A DNA stretch of 64,000 bases from Octopus bimaculoides. Lineage: Eukaryota. Numbering within the stretch: position 1 is the stretch's first letter; each line of letters begins with the position of its first letter. The stretch spans positions 172,523,590 through 172,587,589 of the forward strand of contig NC_068982.1 in NCBI RefSeq assembly GCF_001194135.2. Reading direction: 5' to 3'. Shown here piece by piece: positions 19,766 through 64,000 of the stretch. A program made the position numbers and the translations under genes. Under the pieces are notes generated by a model. That model ran no database searches, had not been told where the DNA came from, and saw only the letters and a program-made list of their open reading frames with translations.

Positions 19766-20069
19766 AGAGAAAGAAAGAGAGATAGGTAGATACATATATA
19801 TGTGTGTGTATGTATATATATATAAAGAATATAAAAGATATATTAGGTATATGTATAGCATGCAGCATATGTATAGTTAATAATAAATTATTATATTCTT
19901 TATGCAAGTATGCATTTGTACATATACAGAGGTGTGGATATATACATTATATACACCGGAGGTATTTGTGGGAAGACCAAATAGGCGTGAGAACGTCTGC
20001 GTGGGTGAGCTTTTGTAGTAGTCTTGTGCGTGTTCGTATGTGTGAAATATGCGGGATATTTTAGTCTGT

Positions 20070-20146
<77 letters not shown>

Positions 20147-20294
20147 ATACAAATAATATGTGAGTATATGTATGTACATACTTACATCTACCTGTATATA
20201 TAGATGCATATCCGGGTGCAGGACGTTGCAAAAAAAAAAAAAAAAACGTGGACAAAATGATAAGCAGAGCACAGAAAACACACAGGCCACATAG

Positions 20295-20332
<38 letters not shown>

Positions 20333-21024
20333 CCTGCTCTTCATATTTCGGCGCAGTCGCAGTTACTGCTCGTATGGCATGGCTTTCACAGTGCGTGTGT
20401 GTCTGTTTTTGATTTCTTATGGTTGTATCTCGACCTCATAGTGTTTATCGTGACCTGCGCGTATATTATATTATGCCTTATATATAACATACTTACAAGG
20501 CGGAATGAAAGCGTGCACGCGTGCGCTCACTCACACTCACATATTTCAGTGTAAGCATATCGTATAAGTTCGTGTTGTGCATGTGTGTCTGCGTAAGTAT
20601 ATGAATGTGTGTGTGTGCGTATATGTATTTACATTTTTATATACATTTATATATATATACACATATCGGAATATTTGTACATAAATGCGTGTTTTACTAG
20701 CCTATTAGTTATGCGCATTTGTGTTTGTGTGGGCTTCTCGCTGTGATCTTACGTAATATTAGCGTACGTATGTGTGTGTGTAGGCTGAGAATTATGTATC
20801 AGTGTGTGTGTGTGCGTGTGTGTGTGTGGTCATACATGTTTGCATTTGTGTGTTGTGTTTCTGTAGGTATAATATCGGTGATACATATGTATGTATAACC
20901 ATTGTCTCTGCACGAACTACCTGCATATGTGGTATACATTTATGTATGTCGTGACTCAGTCGTGTGCGCGCGCGCGTGTGTGTGTACGTGCAGCTTCACA
21001 TGATTTAAGTGGTGCTGTGTTCGC

Positions 21025-21056
<32 letters not shown>

Positions 21057-21320
21057 GTGTGTGTGTGTGTGCCAGATTATGTTTTGGATTTTTCGTTATG
21101 TGTGTTTCCTTCTGTATAGTTTCTTTTATGTTATAAATTTGGCAGTCTTTCGGTATCAGTAGACATCATCATTCACCCTCTTTTTCAGCATAACTTCTTT
21201 ATCTGTGTCATGAAAGAACTTTGTGTGGATGAATGACATTGTCTACTAATACTGAAAGATTGGCGTGTGTGTGTGTGTGTGTGTATCTATCTGTCTATAT
21301 ATATATAAATATATATATAA

Positions 21321-21368
21321 GGGCATTACTGTACAAGAATGCCGAGGCATTCTCGTATAGTAATGCCC
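21321..21368. repeat. 23-bp near-perfect palindrome within TA runs (mini-MITE-like)
   Basis: GGGCATTACTGTACAAGAATGCC-GA-GGCATTCTCGTATAGTAATGCCC; 21 of 23 positions are Watson-Crick pairs. Confidence 0.9.
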
Positions 21369-21495
21369 CTATATAAATATAAATAATTATGCTCTTGGGA
21401 AGAATGGATGGATTTTTTTCCCTTATGAAGTTTTTTTTACTCTAGCTACCTGATAAGTTCTTGTAAAAGATCTTATCCTATTATTGAATATATAT

Positions 21496-21531
<36 letters not shown>

Positions 21532-21795
21532 GTATGTATTCTACAGAATTCTCGAACGAAAGGTGGCTGGCTTCTGGTTTTTCCCGTCTTCAACCCGATT
21601 TTCGGTCTTCACAACCATCCTACATTTGAGATTTCTTTTATTTTTCTATAGACTTTCGATTCATTCGGCGCTTCTAAGTTTGTTTACAAAATACATATGT
21701 GCGTGAGTGTGCGCGCACACGCGAGTGTCTGTATATTTGTACTGGAATATGTATTACGTGTTAATATGTGCGATAATGTTCTTCATACCTAAGTA

Positions 21796-21832
<37 letters not shown>

Positions 21833-21840
<8 letters not shown>

Positions 21841-22821
21841 ACACTTCTATCGCCATTATATACAAACAAACCATCTTCTCTCACTATAAATATTGACAGA
21901 CGCGNNNNNNNNNNTTCCCGCCAGAACACAAACTGACCAATCACAGCCCCTAATAAGGTCACGTGATAGTGTTATTCTAATGATTTTCTGGAGCCCCTAT
22001 TTTACTATAAATAGACTAAATTATCCCCGCCAATTCGTCGCGCCCCAGATCGTCTAGATCTGGCCGTCGGCCACACACGCGTAACACAGCCAGCCAGTTT
22101 CCAGCGACGACATCAACACCCTCATACAACTATGAACTACAAGCATCGTCCCCGACGTCGCCAGCAGCAACACGACACTNNNNNNNNNNACGACTACCAG
22201 CATCGTCCCCAACAGCGTCAACATGACTTCTACGTACACGAGCTACCGACAGCTAACCGCAGAATCTCTCTTCGATCCTGTTTGTGTGAATCACCTCACC
22301 ACGAAATAACAGCCAAGAACCCAGCCTGCGAAGAACATCTTTATTCAAGAACCCGGCTTGGCATGGAAGCCCTAACATCACAACTAGTGATCGCTCTGCC
22401 CCACACGCCTTAACTTCTTATATACAGACACTTACCACNNNNNNNNNNAAGAACCCGGCTTGGCATGGAAGCCCTAACATCACAACTAGTGATCGCTCTG
22501 CCCCACACGCCTTAACTTCTTATATACAGACACTTACCACTGTGTACTCTAAGAACTGGTATCTTAAATCCTTATACGTGTTACCGACTCTATTCAATAC
22601 TGTGTATCTCTCGCACCCACATACATGTATTACTTACATACACTCTTTTGTTTACATGACGGCCTGTCTTTTGTTGTGTTTTATTATGTCGCATTCACAC
22701 ACACACAGACATACGATTTAATGCTCCAATAAATACTACTGTTATTCATCTTCATACCGTTGTGTTCCTATCGTCTTCCTTATTGGCATTTACGAATTCT
22801 CTATGTTATCAAAGTATAACA
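21833..22821 (+). mobile_element. Probable solo LTR inserted in (TA)n
   Basis: A CpG-rich block flanked by (TA)n on both sides. It has CCAAT (21937), CACGTG (21960), TATAAA (22006) and AATAAA (22728) in that order, and ends ..GTATAACA. A 5' TG terminus is not clear. Confidence 0.5.
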
Positions 22822-23061
22822 TATATATATATATATCATTTGATATATTTTTGTGTTCGACCGTGTGACGCGTTTATAAAAGGAGCCTGTTTTTCCATTC
22901 GTCACCATTTCTCCCTTTTGGTTCGCACGGTCGTTCTTACATATATATGCATGTAGCCAATGAATGAAGGACTTCACGGATATTCGTCGACATATATATA
23001 TATATATAAGCCGACATTAGTGATACATATAAATGTAACGTATGTTATGTTTGCTTACACA

Positions 23062-23062
<1 letters not shown>

Positions 23063-23133
<71 letters not shown>
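23063..23133. repeat. (CA)n microsatellite
   Basis: Seen directly in the sequence. Confidence 0.97.
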
Positions 23134-23136
<3 letters not shown>

Positions 23137-23546
23137 CTGGTGATTCATTCCATTGCAACTCAGAGATTCTGTTCACCTGTGTTCTATCAGTGAGTCGATC
23201 AAACCTTTTTGTGTCATCGATAGCAGACGACAGAGAAAGTCCGGTTAGCAATTGAATAAATCATCGGCTGTCTTCTCTGTAATAAATCTTCTTTAAGCGC
23301 CCGGCAGCCGAACAGCATTTCAAAATACTGCGCCAGGTTATTTCTATCGCTCATTAAAATTTCAGTTTCGTTTCATGTCGTGTCTCTGCCAATAGCATCA
23401 ATGTAACCGAATGAGCTTCGTACACTATCAGGGTATAAGGAAGTTTCCAAAACTAACATCCGATAAGGCTTGTTATTCAACATGAGCAATGACGATGGAA
23501 GCCTACCTTCCGTTGAGCAGTCATACCAGAGATGGATTGATTATAC

Positions 23547-23940
23547 TCTTTTACTTGTTTCAGTCATTTGACTGCGACCATGCTGGAGCACCGCATTTAG
23601 TCGAGCAAATCCACCCCAGGACTTATTCTTTGTAAGCCTAGTACTTATTCTATCGGTCTCTTTTTGCCGAACCGCTATTTTACGGGGACGTAAACACACC
23701 AGCATCGGTTGTCAAGCAATAGTGGGTGGACAAACACAGACACACAAAAACACATACATACATATATACATATATACGACGGGCTTCTTTCAGTTTCCAT
23801 CTACCAAATCCACTCACAAGGCTTTTGTCGACCCGAGGCTATAGTAGAAGACACTTGTCCAAGGTGCCACGCAGTGGGACTGAACCTGAAACCATGTGGC
23901 TGGTAAGCAAGCTACTTACCACACAGCCACTCCTGCACCT
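23547..23940 (-). mobile_element. SINE family A, full length, young
   Basis: Complete head, core, microsatellite and tail. Confidence 0.92.
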
Positions 23941-24705
23941 AATTCGCCTATGTCCATAAATCTCTTCTTTGGTCCTGTGTTTACGCCGTAAGATTTTTTT
24001 GACCCTTATGAAAGAGGCTTGGTGTATGTACCATCAAAACTATATTGAAGTTCCTTCGCCATTCTACAGTTTTCAGTTCCTTAGGGAGGAAAATGCTCTC
24101 TACGTAGCTTTGATTTTGTTTCAGTCATTGGATTACGGCCATGCTGGGGCTTCGTCTGGAAGGGTTTTTAGTCGAGAACAATTCGAGCCCAGTACTTCTT
24201 TTTTCACAGCCTCGTATTTATTCAACCGTTCTCGTTGCCGAACGGGTACATAAGCAAACCAATACACGCGCGCGCGCACACAAACACACAGACACGCACG
24301 AGTCAGTGCATGTGTGTTTTGTGGTATGTTATTTCTAACGAATGTGTAGCTGTTACTCGGCCTTCTGATATCCACCGTTCTCGATTCCACTGTTAATACT
24401 CTACAGCATATGCTTCAAGGAAATTATTGATCTGCCGAGAGACATATTGATCCCCAGAAATTATGCACGTTGTTCGTTCTCGCAGAATTATTATAATGGA
24501 CATTCCAATAGTTTTCTTTTCTGTATTCTACACGTTCTTGACTATTGTGTGTGTGTGGTGTGTATTTGAATGTGGGTGCGCCTATGTATATGCATACATG
24601 TGTGTATGTGTCCACACGTCTCTTTGTGTTTATTAGACTTAAAATAAGTACTGGGGTAGGTTTGTTCAACCAAAGCCCTCCAAAGGTGTATTCCAGCATG
24701 GCCAC

Positions 24706-24749
<44 letters not shown>

Positions 24750-25477
24750 AACAATATATGAGTATATGCATATATATGTACATGCCTTCATCTACATGTA
24801 CATATAGATACATAGCTGGGTACATGACGTTGCAAAAAACATGGACAAAATGATAAACAAGGTTAAAAAAACACGCAGGCCGCATAGAGAACATATCCTT
24901 CATCAGCTGCCACCATTAAAACACTGGCGTTTCGAAGAGTTACACACACATACATACATACGTACGTACGTACAAAAACATTCACACACGCTCACACATA
25001 AATATACATACACTGAACACCATTAGTTTAATGGAGTACTTTGTGTGTGTGTATATGTGTGTGTGTGTGAATGCGCGTGCGCTCTTACACAGATATGGTT
25101 AATGACTGATTAGTTGTTTTCACGGTCATTGACCGGGCCATCAAAACAACTTTGCCTTTCCTTAAACTAACCAATTACCTCCCCTCCTTCCTTCATTATC
25201 TTTTTCGCTAATATTCCTTCGCCCACTTCCACTCTCATTTCTCATTCACTTCACTCACTTTCTCCAGACACTCCCCTCTCGCGCATGCTCAACAATGTAT
25301 TTTCGTTTTCTATTTCATGTCATTCTTCACTCTGTCTCCGATCTCATAGAATAGGGACGAGGAAAATCTGTTCTCGTTCCCCAATGAAGGGTTTTGATCG
25401 AATCCAGGGTAACACGTTTCCAAGTGGAACTCGAACTCAATCACCTCTTGGTCTCATTAGTATCACTTTTTAAACAT

Positions 25478-25850
25478 AGATGTAGACTTCGCTCTGTGGT
25501 AAGAAGCTTGCCTCCCAACCACACGGTTCCGGGTTCAGTCCTACTGCGTGGCACCTTCGGCAAGTGTCTTCTAATACAGCCTCGGGCCGACTAAAACTTT
25601 GTCATTGGATTTGGTTGGCGGAAACTGAAAGAAGCCCGTCGTGTACACACGCACATACACACACACATACACGTATATATTATGGTGTGTTTGCGTCCCC
25701 GTAACTTAGCGGTTCGTCAAAAGTAGCCGATAGAATAAGTGCCAGACTCAAATAAGAAAGTAGTGGGGTCGATTCATTCGACTAGAAAAAAATCTTCTAG
25801 ATGGTGCCCCAGTATGGCCGCTGTCTAATAACTGAAACAAGTTTAAAAGA
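25478..25850 (+). mobile_element. SINE family A, full length, diverged but CpG-retaining
   Basis: CCGGGTTCAGTCC..GCCTCGGGCCGAC..AAGCCCGTCG..GCGGTTCG..CCGATAG are all retained. Confidence 0.85.
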
Positions 25851-25854
25851 AAAC

Positions 25855-25916
<62 letters not shown>

Positions 25917-26361
25917 CGAAGAATATATGCATGTATACACACATATTTGTACATACTTACATCTACATGTGTATATAAATGCATATCAGGGTACAGGACG
26001 TTAGAACAATGAACTACAGAGAATGGAACGAACACATAGGAAAACAGATAGCCACTTGGAATAATTCCATCGTCAGCTGCCTCTATTCTAACTATATATA
26101 TATATACATAGGAAAAGTTGAAAAAGGAGACGAACGCTCAAGATGTTATTTATATCTTCTACAAATGTAGAAGATATGAAGATATAAATGTTTTAATAAC
26201 ATCCTGGGCGTTTGTCTCCTTTCAATTTTTCCTATTTTCTCCTAAATACGACTTACTTATCCCGGAATCAAATCACACAGAAATGTTAATCATTGTTTCG
26301 TAGGACACTTAAGCAACATTTAGCTACCTTGTAATTATACCCCTAGACCTTTCCTATAAAT

Positions 26362-26396
<35 letters not shown>

Positions 26397-26790
26397 GATT
26401 GTCTCTTCTTGCTAGTTAATTCAACTTGAATGTTTTTTCCGATTTAGTTTTATCTTTGCATATCTTTGCGCGGATGTCCCTCGCTAAGAAATGAATTGAT
26501 AGTGAGACATCTATACGTGAGTGAATTTAAGTGACGAAAGCTTGTACAGCCCTTTTGGGACTGTCTCGGTCGCAAGAGTAGATTCCAGTAACAGGTATCG
26601 CACGATTCCTGCTACTATCTTTCTCCTGGAAGAGTACCCTGGGAATGTATTTAACCCTTAGATGGTACACTGACTGTTACTACCGGACCAGAACGGACAG
26701 GGAGTTATTGTAATTAAGGGGTAACTCTGTATTACCCAACAATTCCGGAACTGGAATCACAAAAACGGATGCAGTTTAATATCATACACT

Positions 26791-50329: not shown

Positions 50330-50530
50330 TTTCAGGCACCGACCGATTGGCAACGCATTGAGGCATAAATCAGCTGTCACGTGCTGAATATTTAACAAGA
50401 TGGCGTAGTGACAGCTGGAACGCCTTTGATAAAATATGTCTGTTCGATATGGCTGACTTGGGACTAAACAACAACAATAATGCACCGTTATATTACAACG
50501 TAACGACAGGGTATCTACGTGGCCATTGGA
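50330..50530 (+). promoter_or_regulatory. Candidate promoter at the CpG-depletion boundary
   Basis: About 11 CpGs in 190 bp, with ATTGG (50346), CAGCTG (50371), CACGTG (50378) and YY1-like CAAGATGGCG (50396). The last motif overlaps a family F repeat. Confidence 0.35.
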
Positions 50531-50940
50531 CTTGCTAGAAATAGCAGCTAAATCTCCTCTTGAAAAGAAGGCAATATTTGATAATGTCATATTAGGACAC
50601 ACTACATGTAAATGATAACACACCAGAAAATTTGATTGGCTATAACATCGCTTTCATTTATTTTACACTGTTATTGTAGAATGGACTTATGACAAATTCC
50701 ATCCATTTGGTCGTTTGTTCATTAAATATTCGTTTTTTTTCCCCCCCTTTGATTTTTTTTTACACGCTAGCATATCTTAGATGAGAATTGGTTTTGAGAT
50801 AGGGTTTTTCTAGATGGATGCTTTACCAGGGTTTTTTATAATTCTCAAGTGCAGTGTGTCTGGTCATAATGTTAACTAACAAGGAATATCAACTTCAGCA
50901 CTGGCTCATTCGTATGGTGACAATCAAAATATCACACACA

Positions 50941-50976
<36 letters not shown>

Positions 50977-51264
50977 GCTTGATACAGTTTCTATCTGTCA
51001 CAAGGTATTGATCATTCCAGGGCTGTAGCAGAAAATACTTGCCCAAGATGCCACACTGTACAACTGCATTTGAAATCATAAGTTTGCAAAGCAACCTTTT
51101 TAAACATACACTCATGCTTGTGTCTGTATGTAATGCATTATTTTATAACATAAACTCAAATGTCTACTCTGAGTACTGAAGAAATATCATATATTAATGA
51201 TAGCTGATCGAAAAAGAAAAGAAAAACGCATGAGGGAAATTGATTTATAAATGAATTTGATTGT

Positions 51265-51405
51265 TGTAAGTGGTTGGGCATTCAGCCACAGAAATCAAGC
51301 CAAAACAGACTATGGAATCTACTGTGGACCTTGGTATTGCCAGTTCCTGTCAAGCCATCCAACCCATGCCAGCATGGAAAACAGGCCTTAAATGTTGATG
51401 ATTGA
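51265..51405 (+). mobile_element. RTE-associated 3'-tail repeat (..CCAACCCATGCCAGCATGGAAA..(GAT)n)
   Basis: Other copies are at 53700-53835(-), 57280-57650(-), 59440-59570(-) and 62965-63282(+). Confidence 0.7.
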
Positions 51406-51600
51406 TTTCCAACCAAACGTTTATATCTTCCATCTGTGATAAAGCTACATCTCAGGGCATTCAGCCATCAAAAGATCTACAAATGAAGTTCTTGTCATCA
51501 AATTCCATGTGCAACTGTAAAGCAAGTGGCATGGACATATTTGTGTATGTTTGTGTGTTATTTTTTAAAGGTGTGTGTGTGTGTGATGAGTTTGAGGAAT

Positions 51601-52660
51601 TTATCATATAGGTAGGTGTCCTGTAGGATTCTTTTCTCAGCACCCCTGGTGTTTATTATAGTTCTCCAGGCCAATATTGAGGAGAAGTTTATGGTGAGAT
51701 GTCCATGGGAACTTCTTTTTGTCAATGACCTTGTTTTTGTAGATGACTCTGTTGAAGAATTAGAGAGAAAAATTCCAAACTTGGGAGCAAACGCTTGAAT
51801 AAAGAGGTCTTCAAGTAAGCATAACGAAGACAAAAGTTTTAATTAGCTGGAAAGAAGATATGATTCTCCTTCCCTCTGAAAAGTGGCTATGCTTGATATG
51901 GAGAGAAAAAGTAAGTAGGAATGTTATACAGCGTAACCAAAGTAAACTATGGGTGCATAAAAGATATAGAAGATCACAGGTAAACTGAATGAAAAGGAAG
52001 ACTTCATACAGGGCAGATGAACAAGAGTTGTTAGTAATATGAGTAGCAGTGAAGTAAATTCATTCAAATGCTCGGTAGGTGACTAATTAGCTGTGAAAAT
52101 AAGTGTTCTGAAAGCATAGTAATAAGAGTAAGAATAACTTCTGCTGGCAATGAAGATATTCTCTCTCTCTCTCTCTGTGGAGTGTATAAGGCTTTTAAAT
52201 AAAGTGTGATGTGCAGTTAGGAGATGCTGGGAAGTATGAGGGTGTGGTACCTGTGTATGAAGTGCAAAACATTAGCATAAATACGAGGAGGATGTATGGA
52301 AGATGGAATGAAATGAGGTGAGCATAGATGTGTAACATTAGAGTGCATGAGCTACATTGCACCAGTGAACAGAAGAGAAAAAAACTGGGTATAAGGGGAA
52401 TCAGATGTAGTGTGTAAGAGGGAAGGCTAAAGTGGTGTGTGTGTGTGGTGGTGGTGGTGGTGGGAGACATTTGGCAATTGTCAAGTGATCCAGATGGAAT
52501 GAACATTCAAAAAAGAGGGGCATAAGGAACAAGTGAAGAAGGCTGATTTTAAGGAGTTGATATATACAAGGGATTGTAATAAGTGGTAAGGTGTTGCGAT
52601 GGTGAAACTGTCCAGCTGTTCCTAGTATCAACAAATCGACATGAAACTGATGAGGAGGTT
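51601..52660 (+). pseudogene. Degenerate RTE-clade LINE ORF (RT C-terminal half to 3' end)
   Basis: Reads SAPLVFIIVLQANIEEKFMVRCPWELLFVNDLVFV (decayed YADD motif), E*RGLQVSITKTKVLIS and EKLGIRGIRCSV*EGRL. There are many stops and frameshifts. Confidence 0.85.
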
Positions 52661-52751
52661 GTGTTTGAGTATATAGAAGTATATCTGTGAATAAATTGCA
52701 TAAATCGCAGCAATGCAATACAATAATGACACAAGGCTGCCTATGTGTGTA

Positions 52752-53319
52752 CAATAGTACCTCACTTTATGAGGACCTGCTTTAAGAGACCCTGGTTTCA
52801 CGAGTTATTACTTTTCAAGCACAACATCCACAGTTTGAATGAAGGGCAAAAGTTTCTACTACCATAACAAATGCTTTTGCGTGTTACCAAGAAATTCATT
52901 GAGAGCGAGAAAAAGCTTCTTCTAAACAAACAACTCTAGGCTTGTCTTTTAAAAAGAAATCTATAAGTCCGTCTAAGAAGGCTTGTGAATCGGTGATCGC
53001 ATCTACAAGTGATGGTGTGTGCATGTCTAGTGCGAGTAAAAGTGATTCAGAAAACGATTATAATAATAATATTTGTTTTATTATAAATTATCTTGACATT
53101 CTTTTTACTTTACATAAAATATTCTTTACATTCTACTGTTATTTTATTGTCATTTATTTACAAGTATTATAAATTTTATAGGTGAAATATTTTTCTGGGA
53201 AGATGATGAAGTATGATTTATAACATTGCTACATGAGAAATTATTACCCTGCTTTACTGAGTTTTCACTTTACGAATGGTCTCCAAGAACAAATTAAATC
53301 GTATATTGAGGCATTACTC
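52752..53319. mobile_element. Tigger/pogo-like MITE, CpG-decayed
   Basis: TA|CAATAGTACCTCACTTTATGA matches TCGTATATTGAGGCATTACTC|TA at 16/23 inverted positions, with TA on both sides. Confidence 0.6.
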
Positions 53320-53961
53320 TACATGTATTCAGTGTGTATGATGTGGAGTGTCTATGTAGTTTAGAAGTGACAAAAATATAATTCTGAGCCTACAGGCATT
53401 CCTTCAGAGGCTGTAGACGAGATATGCAGTAGGTGAAGCATATCTTTCTCTAACCAAAGACTTAATAACAAAAAACAACTGATAAATAATGGGTCATTGT
53501 TGTTTAGACCCTGGGTCAATGACTTTGATTAAGTGGATTTGTAATCACTGACATTCCATTCATTAATCATTCTAATCTGTTTAAAGATATCCAGGATGAT
53601 ATTTTCCAATGAGGCCTTTTCGTTTTCAAGGCATCAGTACATAATGTCATATAATAATATCTAACTACTATACTATCAAATGTGTTTCTATGTATATATA
53701 TATACATCATCATCATCATTCAAACATCCACTTTTCCATGCTTGCACGGGTCAGACAAAATTTGCTGAGGCCAATTTTCTATGGTTGGATGCTCTTCCTG
53801 CCGTCAACTCTTACCTTGTTTCCAGGCAAGATGATGCTTACCATGGTCAGACATGTTTTTCCACAGATGACCGGAAATTAATGACATCACTCATATGATG
53901 GCAATGCTTGTTTGCAACTATCACATGATGTCTGGTCAAGAGCACACACAGACACAGCCAC

Positions 53962-54104
53962 ATACAATGGGCTTTTTGCAGTTTCCATCTACCTAATCCA
54001 CTCGTAAGGATTGGGCTACAGCAAACGGCACTTTTCCAAGGTTCCATGCAGTGGGACTTCCAAGACCACAAGATTGAGAAGTAAGCTTCTTACCCACGCA
54101 GCCA

Positions 54105-54108
<4 letters not shown>
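53962..54108 (-). mobile_element. SINE family A head, CpG-decayed
   Basis: TACGACGGGC>TACAATGGGC, TTCCGTCT>TTCCATCT, CCACGCAG>CCATGCAG. Confidence 0.8.
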
Positions 54109-54156
<48 letters not shown>

Positions 54157-54921
54157 AAGAGAGCATGTGTATGCTTTTCTTGTTTCAACCAACATTAATA
54201 TTACCATTTCTGTTTCAACATCATTATATCATTGCTGTTACACGAGTCAAACAATGCCGACAGAGAATAAACAATGGCATTTTGCAGTAGTGGTGATGAC
54301 GTTTGGTGGAGGCTGGTGGAAATTTCCTAGTACAATAAGCATACACTTTAAAGAAACATATCCAGCAAATGGCTTTTCGTATTACTTCCCTTAATTTCAC
54401 TTATTTCTTATTTTAAATTTTTACAAAAGTTCTGTGTGTGTGTGTGTTTTGGATTGCTGAAAATATCCAACAACAATAATTTCTCTAATTATGTTACTAG
54501 TTTTGTATGTGCATGTGACTGGCTGGATACACACACACACACACACACACATATAACACAAACATATAAATATATAGATATATATATCGTATAACACAAA
54601 CACACACACACATATATATTTGTACACACGCTCACACCTCATTTGTTAATAAGTGACAAATAAAAGAAAAGGACACACTATTATATGTAGAACTTTGTTG
54701 TGTGTGTGTGTGTGTGTAACCTGCACACCCGGTCACATCTATCTGCTACACCCAACTGGCGTACTTTCATCTATATCCATCCTCCTTTGTTTCAATACTT
54801 TTGGTTTCAATTAAATTACACTTGGTAATTCAATTAACTGTGCACATGCATTACATCATTACATACGTACATGCAGAAAAGTCAGTGCAGGCAGACATAC
54901 AGCTCATTTATGATATATATA

Positions 54922-54975
<54 letters not shown>

Positions 54976-55071
54976 NNNNNNNNNNNNNNNNNNNNNNNNN
55001 NNNNNNNNNNNNNNNNNNNNNNNNNNNNNNNNNNNNNNNNNNNNNNNNNNNNNNNNNNNNNNNNNNNNNNN

Positions 55072-55119
<48 letters not shown>

Positions 55120-55142
55120 ATAGACACACATAAATATATGTG

Positions 55143-55180
<38 letters not shown>

Positions 55181-56171
55181 AATATATATACATATAGAGA
55201 CATATACATTCACATTTGCACGCACACACATGCGCACACATTGCTTTCTGCCCAACAAACTCCCAAGCCCCATTCTGCTGCACTGCTGGTGAAAATAAGA
55301 TAGAAGTCCCCGATCTGCAGTGCTGAAGGCAAAGTTTTTATGTGTATGTTACGCATATACATATCCATGTGTGTATGCACATGTTTGTACACATGTATGT
55401 GTGTGCACGTGTGTGTGAAAGTGTATAGAAGTGTGTATGTGAGAAAATACATAAAAGAATATATATATATATAGACGGATGTGCATGCATATTTGTTGTT
55501 CCGAGCCCAGGTGCAGCATCATCATCATGAACTACTACTACTACTACTATAAGGGTTTCAGATGTACCATAAGGAAGTCAGCCATGACAATGGGTTAGCT
55601 AACACTCCCAACATACAGTCCTTCTGTGTTTTAAAATAACAGCTTCACCATAACTATTAGATGCTATTCATCGTTTCTCATCCTCCCTCTATCTACTCCC
55701 ACTCCTTCAACATGCATCTTTCTGCTTTTTTTTCTTTTCTTTTTTTCTTTTTACTTCTACCTACTTTTGGTCTGCCTCATCCTCCTTCTCCTCCTCCCGT
55801 GTCTCTATGTCCTTCCCACATCCATCATCATCAGCATATCTTTATTTTTAATTTTAGTTTTCTTTTTTGAACTGTTATAATTTTTTCTTTTATTTTCAAG
55901 TCTTTCTTATTTCTATTTTTTTTTTTTTTTTTTTCATGCCATTTTAAAAACTTTTGAAAGTTTCCTTGTTCTGCAGAGGAAATTCTTCAACTCTTAACTT
56001 ACTTTGTTCTTTGTCTTGTTTTGTTTTGTTTTGTTTTACTCTTTTTTTTTATACGTGTATTTTTTTCTCCCCTCTGTTACTGCTGCAATAATTCTTTGCC
56101 ATCTCCTCCCCAACCTCACTACCCTGCACTCTTATTTTCCCCCCAAAGGTGACTGACATTCTCCTCTTGAC

Positions 56172-56220
<49 letters not shown>

Positions 56221-56632
56221 TTCTATCAAACCTGCAGTCTGTTCAAGAGAGGAGTGGACTAGCACATGTGTGTATGTGTAATGAATATGAGAATGTATTG
56301 TGCTTATTTTCATTGTTGTTCAGCCCCTTTAGAGCCCTGCTTCTGCAGCAGTTCTATCATCATCAAAGGGGTTCAGGCTATTACTACTATCCCATTCCCA
56401 TCTAAATTTTATTCAGACATAGCATATCTCGGACTACATTATACAATATGCCCTACTATTTTTAAAATAGCTGGGTTATGATTCGAGGAAGAAGGCTGAG
56501 CAGACTATGTAGAGATAGAAGCATTTTGCAATGATTTCATAGTTTTAGTGGGGGAAACCAAATAGCCTAGACCCAGGGGGAACTAGTCATAATCTGTTTT
56601 GCAAGGGAGAAAAAAAATGGTAACTTGAAGAT

Positions 56633-56773
56633 AGGCGCAGGCATGGCTGTGTGGTAAGAAGCCTGCTTCCCAATCACTTGGCACCTTGGGCAAGTGTTTT
56701 CTACTATAGCCTTGCACTGACTAAAGCTTTGTGAGTAGATTTTGGTAAACAGAAACTGAAAGAAGCCTGTCAT
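56633..56773 (+). mobile_element. SINE family A head, CpG-decayed
   Basis: CCGAC>CTGAC, ACGG>ACAG, CCCGTCGT>CCTGTCAT. Confidence 0.85.
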
Positions 56774-56864
56774 ATATATATATTGAATTGCCCAGGGCTA
56801 TAGTAGAATAATAAATAAAAAGAAAAGGAAAGCTTCTTACGATGCAAAGAGGAGAGTTTTGAAG

Positions 56865-57030
56865 CCTTTGTATGTGTCAAGCACAAGGGCCAAAGTGCAA
56901 GTTCATTACAACGACCCCAAAAGGATGAAGGGCAAAGCTAACCTTGGTGGAATTTGAGAGTAGAGACAGATGGAATGCCATTAAGCATTTTGTCTAGCAT
57001 GCTAAAGATTCTGCCAGCTTGCCATCTTAA
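56865..57030 (-). mobile_element. SINE family B, CpG-decayed
   Basis: AGGATGAAGGGCAAAGCTAACCTTGGTGGAATTTGAG..AAGCATTTTGTCTAGCATGCTAA. Confidence 0.75.
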
Positions 57031-57052
57031 AGAAATTATATAACCTTTTTAT

Positions 57053-58059
57053 TTTTTTACTTGTTTCAGTTATTAGGCTGTGACCAGGCTGGGGCACTGC
57101 CGTGAGGATGTTTTTGTCAAATAAATCAACCCCCGTACTTTTTTTTTTTTCTTCAAGCTTGGCACATATTCTGTTGGTCTCTTTTGCAAAACTGCTAAGT
57201 TATAGAGGTGTAAACACACCAATATCAGTTATGAAGTGGTGATGGGGGACACGCACAAAGACACACACACATATACACCCATCATCATCATCGTCATCAT
57301 TTAAACTTTTACCATGCTGGCATGGGTTGGACGGTTTTACAGGAGCTGGCTAGCTGAAGAGCTGCTCATGTTTCATGTCTGTTTTCGCTTGCTTTCTATG
57401 GTGGGATGCCTTTCCTAAACACTAACCATCGTAACAAAGTGTATGAGGTGCTTTTATGCAGCACTGGCACAGGTGCATTTATGTGGCACCGATACGGGTT
57501 CTTTTTATGTGGCATCAACATCCACAAGCCTGCAAAGTTAGTGCTGGTACAACGAAAAAAAAGCGCCCCTACCCATGCCATGTTAACACACCCATGCTGG
57601 TGCTGCATAAAAGCATACAATACCCTCTGCGAAATAGTTGGCATTAGGATGGACATATACGACAGACTTCTTTCAATTCCTGTCTACCAAATCCATTCAC
57701 AAAGCCTTGGTCGGCCCAAAGCTATAGTAGAAGACACTTGCCCAAAGTGCCACACAGACTGGTGCCACGCAAGACTGAACCCACAACCATGTAGTTGGGA
57801 AGCAAACTTCTTATTTCTTTATTGCCCACAAGGGGCTAAACATAAAGGGAACAAACAAGGACAGACAAGGGGATTAAGTCGATTACATCGACTCCAGTGC
57901 ATAACTGGTACTTAATTTATCGACCCCGAAAGGATGAAAGGCAAAGGCGACCTCGGTGGAATTTGAACTCAGAACATAAAGACAGACGAAATACCGCTAA
58001 GCATTTCGCCCGGCATGCTAACGTTTCTGCCAGTTCGCCACACAACCATGCCTGAGCCT
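57053..58059 (-). mobile_element. Nested stack: SINE A interrupted by an RTE-tail repeat and a SINE B
   Basis: A tail 57053-57270, RTE-tail 57280-57650, A head 57657-57813, B 57814-58039, rest of A head 58040-58059. Confidence 0.8.
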
Positions 58060-58869
58060 ATGATAACTTCTTACAGTGATGATGATGATGATGATGATGA
58101 TGGTGGTGATAATGAAGGGTTATGGTATTAAAGGATCACAAATTCCAAGAATGGTCTGCAAGTCATATAAAATGACTTCAGTACATGTCTGGGACTTCTT
58201 TCATGTATCATAGGTATGGGTATAGCAAAGTTGACCATACCAAGATTTTGCACTACATCTCTGTCTGGTGCTCTCCTGATTCTGCCATGCATTGTAATGC
58301 TAATGATATCTAAGTTTGGCAGCATTAGTTGGGACCAGAAGGAAACGATTTTAATGCTGATAAACTCAAACCCCCAAAAAACAACATTTGATCTGGATAT
58401 TGTTTATTGCAGTGTTTGCTATTCCTCAATCCTAACAGAATTACTATAATTACGATGATTGTTATTATTTTAATGATGATGATGATGATGATAATGATGA
58501 AGACCAACGAACATCCAAATACACACACACACACACACACACACATGTGCATGCACACACATTTCTGTCAACTTTTCTATAAATGCCCCTGTTAAGTCTT
58601 TATTAAAAAAAAAAAAAAGACAGTCAAATAAACAAAAAAGTAAATAAATAAAAGACAGAAAGAAAAAAAAACAAAAGAACAACAGCAAAAATAAAACAAG
58701 ATCTTGTGGGTAAATAAATATTATTGCAGATGTAGAATGAAAGGTATGGTGGGAAAACATTATTATTATTTTCTCAGCCCAACCTTATTACCATTATTTT
58801 GAGTGATTTGAAATTATTATTATTATTATCATCATTATCATTATTGCTGTCATTATCATCATCATCATC

Positions 58870-59075
58870 ATCATCATATGCTGAATCAGTACAGCGATGG
58901 AGAAAATGCTTTGTGTTGTTGTTTAGGTGGTTTGGTCTGTACTCCCAAAGTCCAGTGAGCCTCAGCTTTACCTTTCGTCCATTATGGCAGGGTAGGCGAT
59001 ATAAAGTACCAGCCAAATCATTGTACCCATTCCCCCATAAATTTTGTGGCTCTGTGACCATATGTGACAAATAAA
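58870..59075 (+). mobile_element. SINE family B, decayed
   Basis: GAAAATGCTTTGTG..GCCTCAGCTTTACCTTTCGTCC..AAAGTACCAG..AAATTTTGTGGCTCTGTG. Confidence 0.65.
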
Positions 59076-59436
59076 GGGATTATTACCATTGTTTTGAAAT
59101 TTTGTAAATCCCATGATAATACAGATTGGAAGCATATTCGTAGCTGCTCTTCCTATTTGCGGTTATGCTGTTGTGAATTGCGGTGAGATGTGTTTGTGCA
59201 TTTATGGTCTGTTAGTAATTGTGGTAGTGAGCCATGTGGTTTACTATTTTGCTTTCAGATCGAGTTTTTCTTTCTTTGTTTTATTAACCCCTTACTTGGG
59301 ATAGGGTGTACATGAGTTGTGGATTGATGAAAATTCATCTTTTAAATGTCAGTTGTAAAACTGAAGCAGTGCAGTACTTCTTAATACTTTTGATATTATT
59401 ATTTCTGTTGAAATGCACTGCTTTTCACCATCATCG

Positions 59437-59484
<48 letters not shown>

Positions 59485-59724
59485 GTACCATTCTTTAATG
59501 TCCGTTTTTCCATGCTGGGGTTGGACCGTTTAACCAGAGCTGGTTAAATGGAGGGCTGCACCAGGTTCCATATATATGTATGTATGTATGTATTGTAGTC
59601 TATACACATGCACATAGCTTTCTCCATCGCAGTCTCTCTCATCTGATATATATATCATAAACTAATATATATACTGATATATATATATATATATATATAA
59701 TATATATCTTGTTCACCGATTTAT

Positions 59725-59768
<44 letters not shown>

Positions 59769-61311
59769 TATACATGTATATGTATATATATATGTGTGTG
59801 TGTGCGTGTGTGCACACATATATATATGCATATATATATATATATATATATAGAGAGATATATATGCGGCTTCCATGAGTATAACAGTACCTCAAGGGAT
59901 ATATGAAGAACATCTTGTGACAATCATGCCATTGCCTTACAGGCGTCCTGTGTAATTCTAGCTTGGATGTGCAATCGTGTTGTGGTATTTCTTTGTTTAC
60001 TGAGGAATTTCGCTTATCTTGGAATTCTCAATATTGGATTCTTTCAGCCTGCATGTTTTGATGTCATTCCTTTGTGATACCATGTCACAGATTCTCTTCT
60101 CTACTGCCAGGAAATGGTATTTCTGTCCAATGTGCTTCTCACATCTTCTGCTTGCATGAAACCATTTTACAACTTTTGCTCATTGTTTCTGTATTTTGTT
60201 TGCTCTATTTTCTATTTTCATTCTATCTCTCTTCATTTTTTTTTCCCTCCCTTTTCTCTTCCTTCTCTTTGACTTCTTATTTTTATGTATAGGTCTTATC
60301 TATNNNNNNNNNNNNNNNNNNNNNNNNNNNNNNNNNNNNNNNNNNNNNNNNNNNNNNNNNNNNNNNNNNTATATATATACATACATACATACGTGAACAC
60401 GCATACATACAGAGTTATCATCCTTAAGACATACACATGTATATGTATGTATTCAGACATGTACTTCCACATATAAATAATTTATATACTGTTAGCAAAA
60501 TTTAAAACTGGGATGGTGATGAACCTAATTATAAATATGTATTTATTCATTTATATATTGCATGTGTGAGTAAGCACATGTGTGTGTGTGTGTGTGTGTG
60601 CAGGCATTGCTCAAAGTGTCACTCAGTGGAACTGAACCTGAAATCGTGTGGGTGGGACACAAACTTCTTAGCCACGTAGTTATGCTTAGTTGCTTGCATG
60701 CACGTGTTTGTGCATATATATTTGAAATAGGTGTATATAATTATGACACCGAAACAGAGGGATAAGCTTCATAAAGCGATTTCCCCAAAATAATGTTTTT
60801 CTTTTCAATGTTCTTAATATGAAAATATGTATGAATGGTGTATGATCAATAGATTTGACCTTTCTAGATATGCTTATGTTGCTACCATCATGGATATGAA
60901 TGAATTTAATTTTATTTGCTGGTTGATACCGATTTGTAGAAGTGGAGCAGTTTGTTTGTATCTTGATATAAGGGGTTGTTTAGGCAGAACTGAGTTGTTG
61001 ATGTTGTTGGTGTTATATGACCCCTGACCTTACATTGAATGTGCAGTATGGACAGAAGTCACAACATACTGTGTTTCATCCAATGTCCAGTCTGTTATTC
61101 TTATGTTTTCAGTTCTGAAGAGAAGTTCATGGTGGGTCTGGTCAAACATGTCAACTGCTGTTCTTCTACATTAAGTCTCAGCTGATATACACAACGTAGA
61201 CCAATATTTGGAACTAAGGTGGTTAATAATACTGCTGCCTTTTCAATGTTTGTTGGACTGAATCCAGTGATGTTCTGGGTTGTTATAGATATATCTGGGT
61301 GCATGACAGTA

Positions 61312-61490
61312 AGGGAGTGAATTGGCAGAGTTATTAGAGCTTCCAGTTGTAAAGCTTTGTGGTATTTATTCTAACTTTTGGCATTCAAAGGTCAAATCAT
61401 GCTGAAGTCATCTTTGGCTTTCATTCTTTCTGGATCAATTACAGAAGTATCAGTCCAAGAGCAATGAACTGGCAGAACTATAAGAATGTT
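61312..61490 (+). mobile_element. SINE family B, fully CpG-decayed
   Basis: TTGGCAGAGTTATTAGAGC..TCATGCTGAAGTCATCTTTGGCTTTCATTCTTTCTGGATCAATT aligns with 43610-43812, with every CG lost. Confidence 0.7.
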
Positions 61491-62536
61491 GGAGCAGATG
61501 CCTTGTGGCATCTGTTCTGGTTCTTCTGCATTTCAGAGTCTAATTCTGCCTAATTCTTCTACAAAGCACTCTTACCAACCTGCAGACCCAGCATGATGAG
61601 TAAGGAAGAATTTCAAGACAAGAGACTGTGCCAAATAGAGGGCAAACAGATGGTACTGAGCAGAGTTGAGAGATGGGTTCTTCCAGCTGGAGAGGCAAGT
61701 GCCCTGATGAATGAATGAAGAAATGAAGGAATGAATGCATGCGCAACAGTGATTGAATAGGAGTTAACAGTGACTATATAGGCTAGGCTGGACCTTGCCT
61801 TGCCAACAAACTGAGATGCAAAAGTTGTAGAGTTGAAGTCTGATTGTTTATTTATTCTTCTGTGCTGTTGTTCATGTTTAACACCAGGTCAACTCTGACT
61901 GAGTAAAAAAACCTGTGATCAAAAGTATTCCACCTGTAACTTATACCTCCTTTTTCTTTTCTTTCTCATTTCAGGTAAAGTATATACATCTACGACTACA
62001 ATATCTAATATGTCCATCCTTTTTATAAGACAGTAAGAGGTGATCTGAGGAAGATTTGGCTACTATTTCTAGCAAGTGCAATGACCAGGTAGAAGCTTGT
62101 ACTTTGCTTGATGTTATTGGTTTTTGTTGTTGTTGTTCTTGTTTAGCTCCAAGCCAACTCTCATCAAGCAGGCCTGTGTTCAGAGGCATTCCAGCCCAGA
62201 AGTTACAACATTTTTTTTTTTATGGCTATGTAGGACTACATTATGCCATATGTCTTGTCTTTGTGTAAGATGGTAGCTTTATTTTGCAACATAAGGGATA
62301 TTTGGCTTCTATTTCTATCAGGTTGTATTATAAAAATAGAGGCTCTCTCATTGCGTTCTCATATAGTTGGTTATTGGGTTGGGCATAGTTAATGGGTTGG
62401 TTGATGTGCGTTGGACTTTTAGTGTTAATTGGTTTCTTGTGGTGTAGTCAGATGAGTGAACAGGGAAATCCCTCATTACTTATTCTCATCTGTATCTCTA
62501 TGCCACTGGCTTAACCCTCTGTTATTACTTCACCAC

Positions 62537-62945
62537 TCTTTTACTTGTTTCCGTCATTTGACTGCGGCCATGCTGGAGCACCGCCTTTTGTCGAGGAAAT
62601 CGACCCCAGGACTTATTCTTTGTAAGCCTAGTACTTATTCTATCGGTCTCTTTTGCCGAACCACTAAGTTACGGGGACGTAAACACACCAGCATCGGTTG
62701 TTAAGCGATATTGGGGAGACAAACACAGACACACAAACACACACATATATATATATATACATATACATATATATATATATACGATGGGCTTCTTTCAGTT
62801 TCCGTCTTCCAAATCCACTCACAAGGCTTTGGTCAGCCCGAGGCTATAGTAGAAGACACTTGCCCAAGGTATCAAGCAGTGAGACTGAACCCGGAACCAT
62901 GTGGTTGGTAAGTAAGCTACCTACCACACAGCCACTCCTGTGCCT
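62537..62945 (-). mobile_element. SINE family A, full length, young
   Basis: Near consensus. Its few differences include CG>CA/TG changes (CCGCT>CCACT, ACGACGG>ACGATGG, GTCGGCC>GTCAGCC). Confidence 0.93.
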
Positions 62946-62964
62946 ACACTGTTCATTTTACACA

Positions 62965-63282
62965 TCCACAAACACACTGCTGCCTGACTGGCTCTCGTGC
63001 CAGTGCTGCATGAATGACTCCTGTATCAGTGACACATAGGAAGCACCATTCAAGCATGGGTTGTTGCCAGTGGTGCCTGACTGGTCCTCATGCCGGTGAC
63101 ACATAAAAAGCACCCACTACACTCTCAGAGTGGTTGCCGTTAAGAAGGGTATCCATCTGTAGAAACCATGCCAGATCAGATTGGAGCCTGGTACAGTCTT
63201 CTGGCTTGCCAGTCCTCAGTCAAACTGTCCAACCCATGCCAGCATGGAAAGTGGACGTTAAACAACAATGATGATGATGTGG
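62965..63282 (+). mobile_element. RTE-associated 3'-tail repeat
   Basis: GAGTGGTTGCCGTTAAGAAGGGTATCCATCTGTAGAAAC..CCAACCCATGCCAGCATGGAAAGTGGACGTTAAAC..(GAT)n. Confidence 0.75.
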
Positions 63283-64000
63283 ATGACTGTGTGAGAAACT
63301 GCATTTTAAAGAAATTATAACTTACAATTAATGATATGAAAAACCTTGTTATTTCTGTTACCATCATTGTAGGAGGTGTATCTACTAATGTTTTTGTATG
63401 TGCAGATACATATTGGTGCACACACATGCATGTGATACATGGTAGTTTCATTCTAGTGTGAATTGCAGGCCTAATTATGCCAAGAATGTACTCAACAGGG
63501 ATAGGTACAAGGGAATTTCATTTATGTGTGAGTGTGTATTTAGGTTTTTACTGGATTTGTGACCACTTCAACCGGACAGTTAAGTATCAAAGGCCACAAA
63601 AGAACTGCCGCAATCAAATGCTTGTCCAATGTTGTTGAAAAAAGCTCAATGTAGATATGGGCAAAGAGAAATGATCAATAGATCAAGTTATAGATTCCAT
63701 TGGTTATTTATAGGAAATATAAGGAAGAAGAGAACTGATTACTTTGATGATCAGTGTGGCATAGTAGTTGGAAACACAGACCTAGGAACACAAGATCACA
63801 AAAAGAATGGCCCAGTTTTGAATCCCACTGGAGACAGAATTTTGTAAAGCAACAGGAGGATACTTAGGTGTCATGACTTGGGTGGGTCCGGCTCCTGTAG
63901 AGTGTCAGGAATAAGGGCCAAAACATTTGCTGGATGGAAGTTCTTCCTCTGAAGATCTCTCCTGCTGTGAACTCACCTTGTGGCGAGTTTCAGATATATT

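What the first reader, a model, noticed from the sequence alone, without database searches (positions are those of the whole stretch)
50500..64000. Sharp CpG-depletion boundary at ~50.5-51 kb: a fossil edge of gene-body methylation
Seen in the sequence: the same SINE families occur on both sides, which gives an internal control. Old copies on the left (17431, 25478, 35063, 37470) keep their CGs while carrying other substitutions. Copies on the right (50975, 53962, 56633, 57053, 61312) have lost almost every CG, specifically to TG or CA. For example, GCCGAACCGCTAAGTTACGGGGACGT becomes GCAAAACTGCTAAGTTATAGAGGTGT at ~57185. Even the young copy at 62537 shows CpG transitions. Established knowledge: molluscs have mosaic gene-body methylation, and 5mC deaminates to T. 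Inference: the right 13 kb lies inside a methylated host gene whose exons I could not identify, and the left 50 kb is unmethylated. T-rich tracts on the plus strand suggest plus-strand transcription.
Basis: partly seen in the sequence, partly recalled or inferred. Interest (0 to 1): 0.7.

Follow-up and report, generated by a model that had tools for sequence, protein, structure and literature searches.

The report
Edge of a CpG-depleted (methylated) domain

Summary
CpG observed/expected (o/e) drops from 0.87 (1-50500) to 0.31 (50501-64000) at identical G+C (0.375/0.374). TpG+CpA rises and GpC does not change. The maximum-likelihood change-point is 50520-50800 (log-likelihood ratio 104; 0 of 2000 block permutations reach it).

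The SINE internal control holds. At equal non-CpG divergence (0.116 vs 0.128), left copies keep 196/256 consensus CpGs and right copies keep 17/54. Of the 37 right-side losses, 32 are TG or CA. CpG decay per unit of neutral divergence is k=2.1 on the left, which is the neutral value for a dinucleotide, and 11.7 on the right.

Three independent short-read assemblies carry one unbranched contig across 50269-50930, so no misjoin lies at the step.

Germline 5mC decay is the only good explanation. However, RNA laid on 78% of the right side shows no exon or splice junction, Pfam finds no coding frame, and no strand signal is significant. No bisulfite data could be reached, and the taxon label was coded.

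This is a textbook footprint of mosaic methylation. Interest is low.

The parts
1..50520 (.). CpG-replete domain (o/e 0.87), inferred to be unmethylated in the germ line
   Evidence: SINE CpGs are lost at k=2.09 per unit of neutral divergence, which is the neutral expectation for a dinucleotide.
50240..50770 (.). Transition zone. CpG o/e is about 1.0 up to 50520, 0.59 for 50521-50770 and <=0.2 beyond.
   Evidence: The zone lies inside one unbranched contig (50269-50930) in three independent DNA runs.
50521..64000 (.). CpG-depleted domain (o/e 0.31, 141 CpGs where about 408 are expected at the left-hand ratio). It runs to the end of the window.
   Evidence: k=11.7.
50510..50599 (.). Short, very high-copy repeat lying on the change-point (about 4,300 times single-copy depth in DNA run X1). 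Part of a moderately repeated element from about 50240 to 50600.
   Evidence: Depth table. Partial RNA reads. Diverged CpG-free copies at 62047-62195 and 62296-62365.
50998..51086 (-). SINE head fragment: 0 of 4 consensus CpGs kept, 28% non-CpG divergence
53962..54058 (-). SINE head fragment: 0 of 4 CpGs kept, 17% divergence
56631..56775 (+). SINE head: 1 of 7 CpGs kept, 12% divergence
57055..57798 (-). SINE tail (57055-57260) with 0 of 11 CpGs kept and SINE head (57657-57798) with 2 of 7 kept. About 400 bp of other sequence lies between them.
60607..60658 (-). SINE head fragment: 0 of 2 CpGs kept
62535..62946 (-). Young complete composite SINE (5% divergence). The tail keeps 10 of 11 CpGs and the head keeps 4 of 8.
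54976..55071 (.). Assembly gap inside an (AT)n/(AC)n microsatellite. Continuity not testable.
60304..60369 (.). Assembly gap not bridged by short-read contigs of four runs
60978..63965 (.). Stretch with the densest low-depth, exact-match RNA contigs and no splice junctions, as expected for unspliced or intronic RNA or for a trace of genomic DNA
   Evidence: RNA run X26 holds 0.40 of the sampled words; contig list

Best explanation
The step at about 50.5 kb is the edge of a domain whose CpGs have been methylated in the germ line for as long as the resident SINE copies have been there. 5-methylcytosine deaminates to thymine, so on either strand CpG turns into TpG or CpA. Right of the edge this has removed about two thirds of the CpGs, both from unique DNA and from every older SINE copy. 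Left of the edge, CpG dinucleotides disappear only at the rate expected from ordinary point mutation. Shown: the composition step, its sharpness, the type of substitution, its independence from copy age, and its independence from assembly joins. Inferred: that methylation is the cause; that the domain belongs to a transcription unit, most likely a long intron of a broadly expressed methylated gene whose exons lie in the untested 22% or beyond base 64000; and that the edge may lie inside or beyond that gene rather than at its promoter.
For: (1) Composition: CpG o/e goes from 0.87 to 0.31 at equal G+C, TpG+CpA rises and GpC does not change. There is a deficit of about 267 CpG and an excess of about 401 TG+CA. 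(2) Change-point at 50520-50800, logLR 104; 0 of 2000 permutations reach it and the left side is homogeneous. (3) Age-controlled SINE test with a leave-one-out consensus: left 196/256 CpG sites kept, right 17/54 (Fisher p=6e-10), at non-CpG divergence 0.116 vs 0.128. Fitting P(kept)=exp(-k*d) gives k=2.09 on the left and 11.7 on the right (likelihood-ratio test p=6e-12). In the 8-16% age class the fractions kept are 0.82 vs 0.21, and in the 16-35% class 0.63 vs 0.00. (4) Of the 37 right-side losses, 32 are TG or CA. Different right copies show TG or CA at the same site, so the decay is independent and post-insertion, not a subfamily difference. (5) A consensus-free test on left/right alignments counts 271 cases of left CG with right TG/CA against 44 of the reverse. 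The GpC control is 148 vs 110. (6) The same contig 50269-50930 occurs without mismatch in three independent runs, with similar depth to its left neighbour. Within that one contig, CpG per C drops from 11/53 to 5/81 (p=0.014). (7) Literature: in Octopus bimaculoides fewer than 10% of CpGs are methylated. They are clustered in introns and exons of a subset of genes, and transposons and intergenic DNA are largely unmethylated. The pattern is the same across tissues (PMC9476566). CpG depletion is a standard proxy for germline methylation in invertebrates (PMC8857923 and PMC2975444, listed). (8) Low-depth exact RNA contigs are densest at 61-64 kb.
Against: No methylation data could be examined. No exon, splice junction or protein domain was found in the right domain. 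RNA contig coverage at 56-59 kb (about 5%) is no higher than in the left control (0-12%), so transcription does not visibly start at the step. The youngest SINE copy is only weakly decayed, with the tail keeping 10 of 11 CpGs, so ongoing methylation is not demonstrated.
Confidence: 0.75

Rival explanations
1. The domain is methylated but is not a gene body. It could be methylation spreading beyond a transcript end, a methylated intergenic or repeat-associated block, or an unannotated non-coding transcription unit.
For: No exon or splice junction in 78% of the domain. No Pfam hit. The published octopus classes include methylation downstream of the transcript end, and somewhat higher methylation on intergenic repeats than on repeat-free intergenic DNA (PMC9476566).
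Against: In that methylome most methylated CpGs lie in introns and exons. A 13.5-kb or longer uniformly depleted block is more than typical spill-over. Cephalopod introns are long, so an exon-free 13 kb is unremarkable (my own knowledge).
Confidence: 0.15
2. Assembly chimera: two unrelated loci, one methylated and one not, were joined through the repeated element at 50.24-50.6 kb, so the sharp edge is artificial.
For: The step coincides with a repeated element. The short-read graph has a branch node at 50269-50297 in all three runs. A 990-N gap lies 1.5 kb to the left.
Against: A single unbranched exact contig covers 50269-50930, that is the whole repeat plus unique right flank and the change-point itself, in three independent runs. 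The left contig 49610-50297 overlaps it by 29 nt, with matching depth in run X1 (52.9 vs 57.2). In run X11 the left contig has about half the depth of the right one (7.88 vs 14.4) and carries a 1-bp deletion at 50193, which I read as one allele of a heterozygous indel.
Confidence: 0.05
3. Copy-age or subfamily artefact: the right-hand repeats are simply older, or derive from a CpG-poor source gene.
For: Several right-hand copies are old (17-28% divergence).
Against: Mean non-CpG divergence is the same on both sides. Age-matched classes differ by 0.82 vs 0.21 and 0.63 vs 0.00. TG and CA outcomes are mixed at the same sites. Unique DNA shows the same step.
Confidence: 0.02
4. A regional mutational bias that is not due to methylation, such as replication timing, recombination or biased gene conversion.
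For: None specific.
Against: G+C, the GpC ratio and non-CpG divergence are equal on both sides. The effect is confined to CpG and goes to TG/CA, and it switches within about 250-500 bp.
Confidence: 0.03

Closest known systems
Mosaic gene-body methylation of Octopus bimaculoides (methylation patterns MP1-MP4; Macchi et al. 2022, PMC9476566)
   Same: A low overall methylation level, with methylated CpGs clustered over introns and exons of a subset of genes and stable across tissues, while most repeats and intergenic DNA are unmethylated. This predicts exactly such two-state CpG landscapes. The MP3 class (first third of the gene unmethylated) and MP2 class (methylation past the transcript end) allow an edge with no exon nearby.
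   Different: Here only the mutational footprint is seen. Neither 5mC, nor the gene, nor the species identity was verified.
CpG o/e as an evolutionary signature of germline methylation in invertebrates (honeybee PMC2975444; Cnidaria PMC8857923; Ciona methylated and unmethylated domains, the last from my own knowledge of Suzuki et al. 2007)
   Same: Low-CpG and high-CpG compartments, with transcription units as the targets and CpG to TpG decay as the mechanism.
   Different: Those studies work gene by gene or genome-wide. Here the edge is resolved to a few hundred bases at one locus and calibrated with interspersed SINE copies, giving a relative decay constant of 11.7 vs 2.1.
Vertebrate CpG-island shore
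   Same: A sharp change of CpG o/e caused by a difference in germline methylation.
   Different: The CpG-replete side is at least 50 kb long at 37.5% G+C. It is not a 1-2 kb G+C-rich island in a globally methylated genome.

Membership tests
Germline-methylated domain of a mosaic invertebrate methylome | Strong regional CpG depletion at unchanged G+C, with a compensating TpG/CpA excess | tested here: met
   o/e 0.31 vs 0.87, G+C 0.374 vs 0.375, TG+CA o/e 1.43 vs 1.17
Germline-methylated domain of a mosaic invertebrate methylome | CpG-specific hypermutability, independent of the age of the sequence | tested here: met
   k=11.7 vs 2.09 per unit of non-CpG divergence, likelihood-ratio test p=6e-12; 32 of 37 losses are TG/CA
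Germline-methylated domain of a mosaic invertebrate methylome | 5-methylcytosine actually present at the remaining CpGs (bisulfite, EM-seq or nanopore) | not testable with these tools
   No bisulfite library could be listed. The 2026 'GENOMIC OTHER' run gave less than 1x depth in unique DNA, which is uninformative.
Germline-methylated domain of a mosaic invertebrate methylome | The organism has a CpG methylation system and a mosaic pattern | not tested
   Species names are coded in the run tables and the homology search gave one unnamed hit. The literature supports this feature for O. bimaculoides, if that is the species or clade.
Gene-body methylation (the domain equals a transcription unit) | Exons and introns of an expressed gene under the domain | tested here: inconclusive
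   No exon or splice junction in 10.4 of 13.3 kb and no Pfam domain. Sparse unspliced RNA contigs are densest at 61-64 kb but are also present in the left control. The stretches 54.1-56.2 kb and 59.4-60.4 kb, and everything beyond 64 kb, were not examined.
Gene-body methylation (the domain equals a transcription unit) | The domain edge coincides with a transcription start or end | tested here: not met
   No unique RNA coverage from 49610 to 54100 in three deep RNA runs, each sampled at about 6%
Assembly misjoin | Loss of independent read or contig support across the junction | tested here: not met
   The exact contig 50269-50930 occurs in runs X1, X9 and X11 and covers the change-point
Vertebrate-type CpG island | A short (about 1-2 kb) G+C-rich, CpG-rich island in depleted surroundings | tested here: not met
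   The CpG-replete state extends over 50 kb at 37.5% G+C

The most novel reading that the evidence does not exclude
The methylation edge is set by neither a promoter nor a transcript end, but by a sequence element or a chromatin boundary inside a long intron or intergenic stretch. The roughly 4,300-copy short repeat at 50510-50599 sits exactly on the change-point and could mark, or act as, such a boundary.
Probability: 0.07. Interest if true: 0.55.

Novelty: already known. Interest (0 to 1): 0.2.

Why it matters
Taken alone, this is a clean single-locus illustration of a well-known phenomenon. It has three modest uses. First, interspersed SINE copies give an internal clock, which shows that unmethylated CpGs in this genome decay at exactly the neutral dinucleotide rate and CpGs in the depleted domain decay about 5.6 times faster. 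Second, the edge is localised to about 250-500 bp with no exon nearby. If that held genome-wide, it would bear on how invertebrate methylation domains are delimited. Third, it flags the region right of 50.5 kb as probably belonging to a broadly expressed gene, which is useful for annotating a gap-rich scaffold.

Tried and rejected
- RNA mapping. After that I avoided long (CA)n and (AT)n runs. Four stretches were examined and only repeat-derived partial reads were found.
- Left control for RNA. The stretch 42860-46200 turned out to be repeat-rich and also carries two exact low-depth RNA contigs, so the idea that transcription is confined to the right is not clean.
- Bisulfite search returned nothing. 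I tried to read C-to-T conversion from the 2026 'GENOMIC OTHER' run at 80% likeness, but depth in unique DNA was too low.
- Six-frame translation by DNA reference was rejected because of stop codons. I repeated it with all open frames of >=50 aa joined by X and got 0 Pfam families. Exons shorter than 50 codons would be missed.
- Rfam at gathering thresholds and ARAGORN over the whole window gave 0 hits, so there is no intronic snoRNA or miRNA and the SINE heads are not recognised as tRNA.
- A homology search with a SINE-derived frame, meant to name the taxon, gave one unnamed ENA hit.
- I suspected a mariner-like transposase in the frame at 50309-50653 (-), but Pfam gave no support.
- Strand tests (poly-T vs poly-A tracts, AT and GC skew, SINE orientation, TG vs CA asymmetry) were all non-significant.
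- A splice-donor-like AAG|GTGAGT lies on the minus strand at 63971-63980. About six such hexamers are expected by chance in this stretch, and five occur, so it is not evidence.
- Bridging gap 60304-60369 with DNA contigs failed.
Full report

Yes. Over the whole window, CpG observed/expected (o/e) is 0.874 for 1-50500 and 0.306 for 50501-64000. G+C is the same on both sides (0.375 vs 0.374). GpC o/e is also essentially the same (0.96 vs 1.05), and TpG+CpA o/e rises from 1.17 to 1.43. All 2-kb windows on the left are >=0.61 and all from 50001 rightwards are <=0.45.

A binomial change-point scan on C-followed-by-G places the maximum at 50521, with a plateau from 50520 to 50800 and a log-likelihood ratio of 103.7. 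With 500-bp blocks the ratio is 101.3. None of 2000 block permutations exceeds 34, and the largest step within the left 50 kb alone is 2.4, so the left side is homogeneous.

The fine profile is as follows:

| Interval | CpG o/e |
|---|---|
| 48990-50520 | 1.03-1.13 |
| 50521-50770 | 0.59 |
| 50771-51270 | 0.19 |
| 51271-51770 | 0.05 |

The switch is therefore complete within about 250-500 bp. It is present both in sequences repeated within the window (0.95 to 0.41) and in unique sequence (0.83 to 0.26). The right side lacks about 267 CpGs relative to the left-hand ratio and has about 401 extra TG+CA.

**2. The N gaps and the possibility of a misjoin**

The window has 21 N runs. None lies at the step; the nearest is 48000-48989. 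The step lies inside assembly contig 48990-54975.

Logan contigs from three independent DNA runs (X1, X9, X11; different samples and studies) each contain an exact, unbranched contig covering 50269-50930. That interval includes the change-point itself. Each run also has an exact contig from 49610 that either overlaps it by 29 nt at 50269-50297 (X1, X11) or ends at 50140 (X9). Depths match in X1 (52.9 vs 57.2). In X11 the left contig has about half the depth of the right one (7.88 vs 14.4) and carries a 1-bp deletion at 50193, which I read as one allele of a heterozygous indel. Within the single contig, CpG per C falls from 11/53 (50269-50520) to 5/81 (50521-50958), p=0.014. I therefore find no sign of a misjoin, although only long reads could exclude a repeat-mediated chimera.

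The two gaps named by the scan's program are different cases:
- Gap 54976-55071 is embedded in (AT)n/(AC)n and cannot be tested with these tools.
- Gap 60304-60369 is not bridged. Contigs from four runs stop 19 nt into it on the left and start at 60370 or later on the right.

Continuity across both gaps is unproven. However, each of the three right-hand pieces is depleted on its own (o/e 0.348 for 55072-60303 and 0.257 for 60370-64000). All 16 left contigs of >=600 bp are >=0.705.

**3. The internal control**

The abundant repeat is a composite SINE made of a head of about 165 bp, a microsatellite, and a tail of about 190 bp. BLAST with both modules found 22 head and 18 tail copies.

I aligned each module and built a CpG-aware consensus with the scored copy left out. 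I then counted, per copy, the fate of consensus CpG sites and the divergence at all other sites. Results:

| Measure | Left | Right |
|---|---|---|
| Consensus CpG sites kept | 196/256 (39 TG/CA, 21 other) | 17/54 (32 TG/CA, 5 other) |
| Mean non-CpG divergence | 0.116 | 0.128 |
| Fraction kept, 8-16% divergence class | 0.82 | 0.21 |
| Fraction kept, 16-35% divergence class | 0.63 | 0.00 |
| Decay constant k | 2.09 | 11.7 |

- The kept-versus-lost difference gives Fisher p=6e-10.
- k comes from fitting P(kept)=exp(-k*d), where d is the Jukes-Cantor-corrected non-CpG divergence. The difference in k has likelihood-ratio test p=6e-12.
- A dinucleotide is destroyed by a change at either base, so k=2 is the neutral expectation. 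The left side sits on it, and the right side is 5.6 times faster.
- At the same consensus site, different right copies carry TG, CA or something else. The decay is therefore independent and post-insertion, not inherited from a CpG-poor source gene.
- A consensus-free count over all left/right alignments gives 271 cases of left CG with right TG/CA, against 44 of the reverse. The GpC control gives 148 vs 110.
- The youngest right copy (62535-62946, 5% diverged) keeps 14 of 19 CpGs. This lies between the two models and does not differ significantly from left copies of the same age (p=0.53).

The 'would refute' condition that CpG loss scales only with overall copy age is rejected.

**4. What is in the depleted domain?**

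I looked for the host gene.

- *Deep RNA runs.* I used three RNA-seq runs from 2026 (raw reads, about 6% of each read, apparently unstranded) and three to four RNA runs held as contigs. They were laid on 49610-50930, 50980-54100, 56225-59420 and 60370-64000. That covers 78% of the bases right of the step.
- *High depth.* All high depth comes from reads that fit only in part, meaning repeats from elsewhere. No bin of unique sequence has exon-like depth, and no junction has the form of an intron.
- *What remains.* Only short, exact, low-depth (2-8x) contigs in the total-RNA-like runs X25, X26 and X47 are left. Many lie between 60978 and 63965, where X26 holds 0.40 of the sampled words (pieces). 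Few lie at 51.8-54.1 kb and 58.9-59.4 kb.
- *Left control.* The stretch 42860-46200 also has two such contigs in X26 and none in X25 or X47.
- *Reading.* This pattern fits unspliced or intronic RNA of a transcription unit near or beyond the right end of the window. It is weak evidence, it carries no strand information, and it does not begin at the step.
- *Other searches.* All open frames of >=50 aa right of 50200, joined and scanned against Pfam, gave no family at E<=0.1. Rfam and ARAGORN found nothing in the whole window.
- *Strand indicators.* All are non-significant. Poly-T vs poly-A tracts number 11 vs 6. AT skew is -0.033 on the right and -0.042 on the left. Five of six right-hand SINEs are in minus orientation (p=0.22). 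TG vs CA outcomes are 17 vs 15.

**5. Mechanism**

The only well-established process that removes CpG specifically, towards TG/CA, several-fold faster than background and in a sharply bounded block is deamination of 5-methylcytosine in the germ line. This is established knowledge, and CpG o/e is routinely used as its proxy in invertebrates (for example PMC8857923 and PMC2975444).

For cephalopods, Macchi et al. (PMC9476566) report the following for Octopus bimaculoides:
- Fewer than 10% of CpGs are methylated.
- CpGs are nearly all either methylated or unmethylated, with few at intermediate levels.
- Methylated CpGs are clustered in introns and exons of a subset of broadly expressed genes.
- Transposons and intergenic DNA are largely unmethylated.
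- Genes fall into four classes. MP1 is methylated throughout, including the promoter. MP2 has a methylated body and downstream flank but an unmethylated start. MP3 has the first third unmethylated. MP4 is unmethylated.

These facts explain two things seen here. SINE copies are CpG-rich on the left and decayed on the right, because they take the state of their surroundings. An edge also need not coincide with an exon, promoter or transcript end.

I therefore commit to a long-standing germline-methylated domain, most probably part of a long gene (intron) that continues beyond base 64000. The edge is either intragenic (MP3-like) or lies some distance from the first exon. The methylation step and the gene are inferred, not shown. 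The taxon is also not verified: run tables are coded and my one homology search returned a single unnamed hit.

**6. Rivals**

- *Age or subfamily artefact.* Refuted.
- *Mutational bias not due to methylation.* It does not fit the specificity or the sharpness.
- *Repeat-mediated assembly chimera.* Unlikely given, but only long reads can exclude it.
- *Methylated but not genic.* This remains open at roughly 15%.

**7. Comparison, novelty and score**

This is the classic footprint of a mosaic methylome, as described for Ciona (from my own knowledge), for honeybee and Cnidaria (PMC2975444 and PMC8857923, listed) and, at the methylome level, for octopus (PMC9476566). It is not a vertebrate-type CpG island, because the CpG-replete side is at least 50 kb long at 37.5% G+C.

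Nothing here departs from the known kind. The added value is the clean quantification (k=2.1 vs 11.7) and the localisation of an exon-free edge. The novelty rating is 'already known' and interest is 0.2.

The most novel reading not excluded is that the edge is defined by a sequence or chromatin boundary element. A repeat of about 4,300 copies lies exactly on the change-point. I give this about 7%.

Noticed in passing
window 50510-50599 (within a repeated element from about 50240 to 50600): A short segment with about 4,300 times single-copy depth in DNA contigs lies exactly on the CpG change-point. RNA reads match 50510-50557 and then continue into a different, consistent sequence. Many DNA contigs elsewhere join SINE-tail-like sequence (about 49800) directly to about 50530. 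Diverged, CpG-free copies lie at 62047-62195 and 62296-62365 on the minus strand.
   Followed up: partly
window 33701-33874 and 34403-34717, flanking the gap 33876-34402: An AT-rich tandem repeat of 63-64 bp (also scored at 127 bp), 96-97% identical between units and containing CpGs (for example TTCGTGTAAACCGC). It is probably one satellite array interrupted by the assembly gap.
   Followed up: no
window 22347-22556: Two copies of a 102-bp unit (90% match) spanning two 10-N gaps. This may be a real tandem duplication or an assembly artefact.
   Followed up: no
window 60978-63965: Low-depth, exact-match RNA contigs (runs X25, X26, X47) tile much of the unique sequence without splice junctions. 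In run X24, seven read pairs begin at 63771, and two fixed differences from the reference occur (63784 A>G, 63957 C>T). A donor-like AAG|GTGAGT lies on the minus strand at 63971-63980, close to the window end. Together these may indicate a transcription unit continuing beyond base 64000.
   Followed up: partly
window 62535-62946: In the youngest SINE copy in the depleted domain, the tail keeps 10 of 11 CpGs but the head keeps only 4 of 8. This is an uneven decay within one element, although the numbers are small.
   Followed up: partly
window 49285-49552 and 44127-44445; also 37470-37622, 57869-58041, 61319-61454; also 51277-51392, 57290-57410, 63147-63262: At least three further interspersed repeat families are present besides the main composite SINE. 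ARAGORN and Rfam recognise none of the SINE heads as tRNA-like. There are too few copies in the window to build a consensus.
   Followed up: partly
window 28000-33000: A mild dip of CpG o/e to 0.61-0.72 inside the CpG-replete side. It is not significant as a change-point (the maximum logLR within the left side is 2.4).
   Followed up: yes
whole window: There are 21 N runs (10 to 990 N). The sequence next to many of them is microsatellite (for example 1557, 9939, 10362, 26836, 46249, 54976). The scaffold is therefore a chain of short contigs broken at simple repeats, and order and spacing should be treated with caution.
   Followed up: partly
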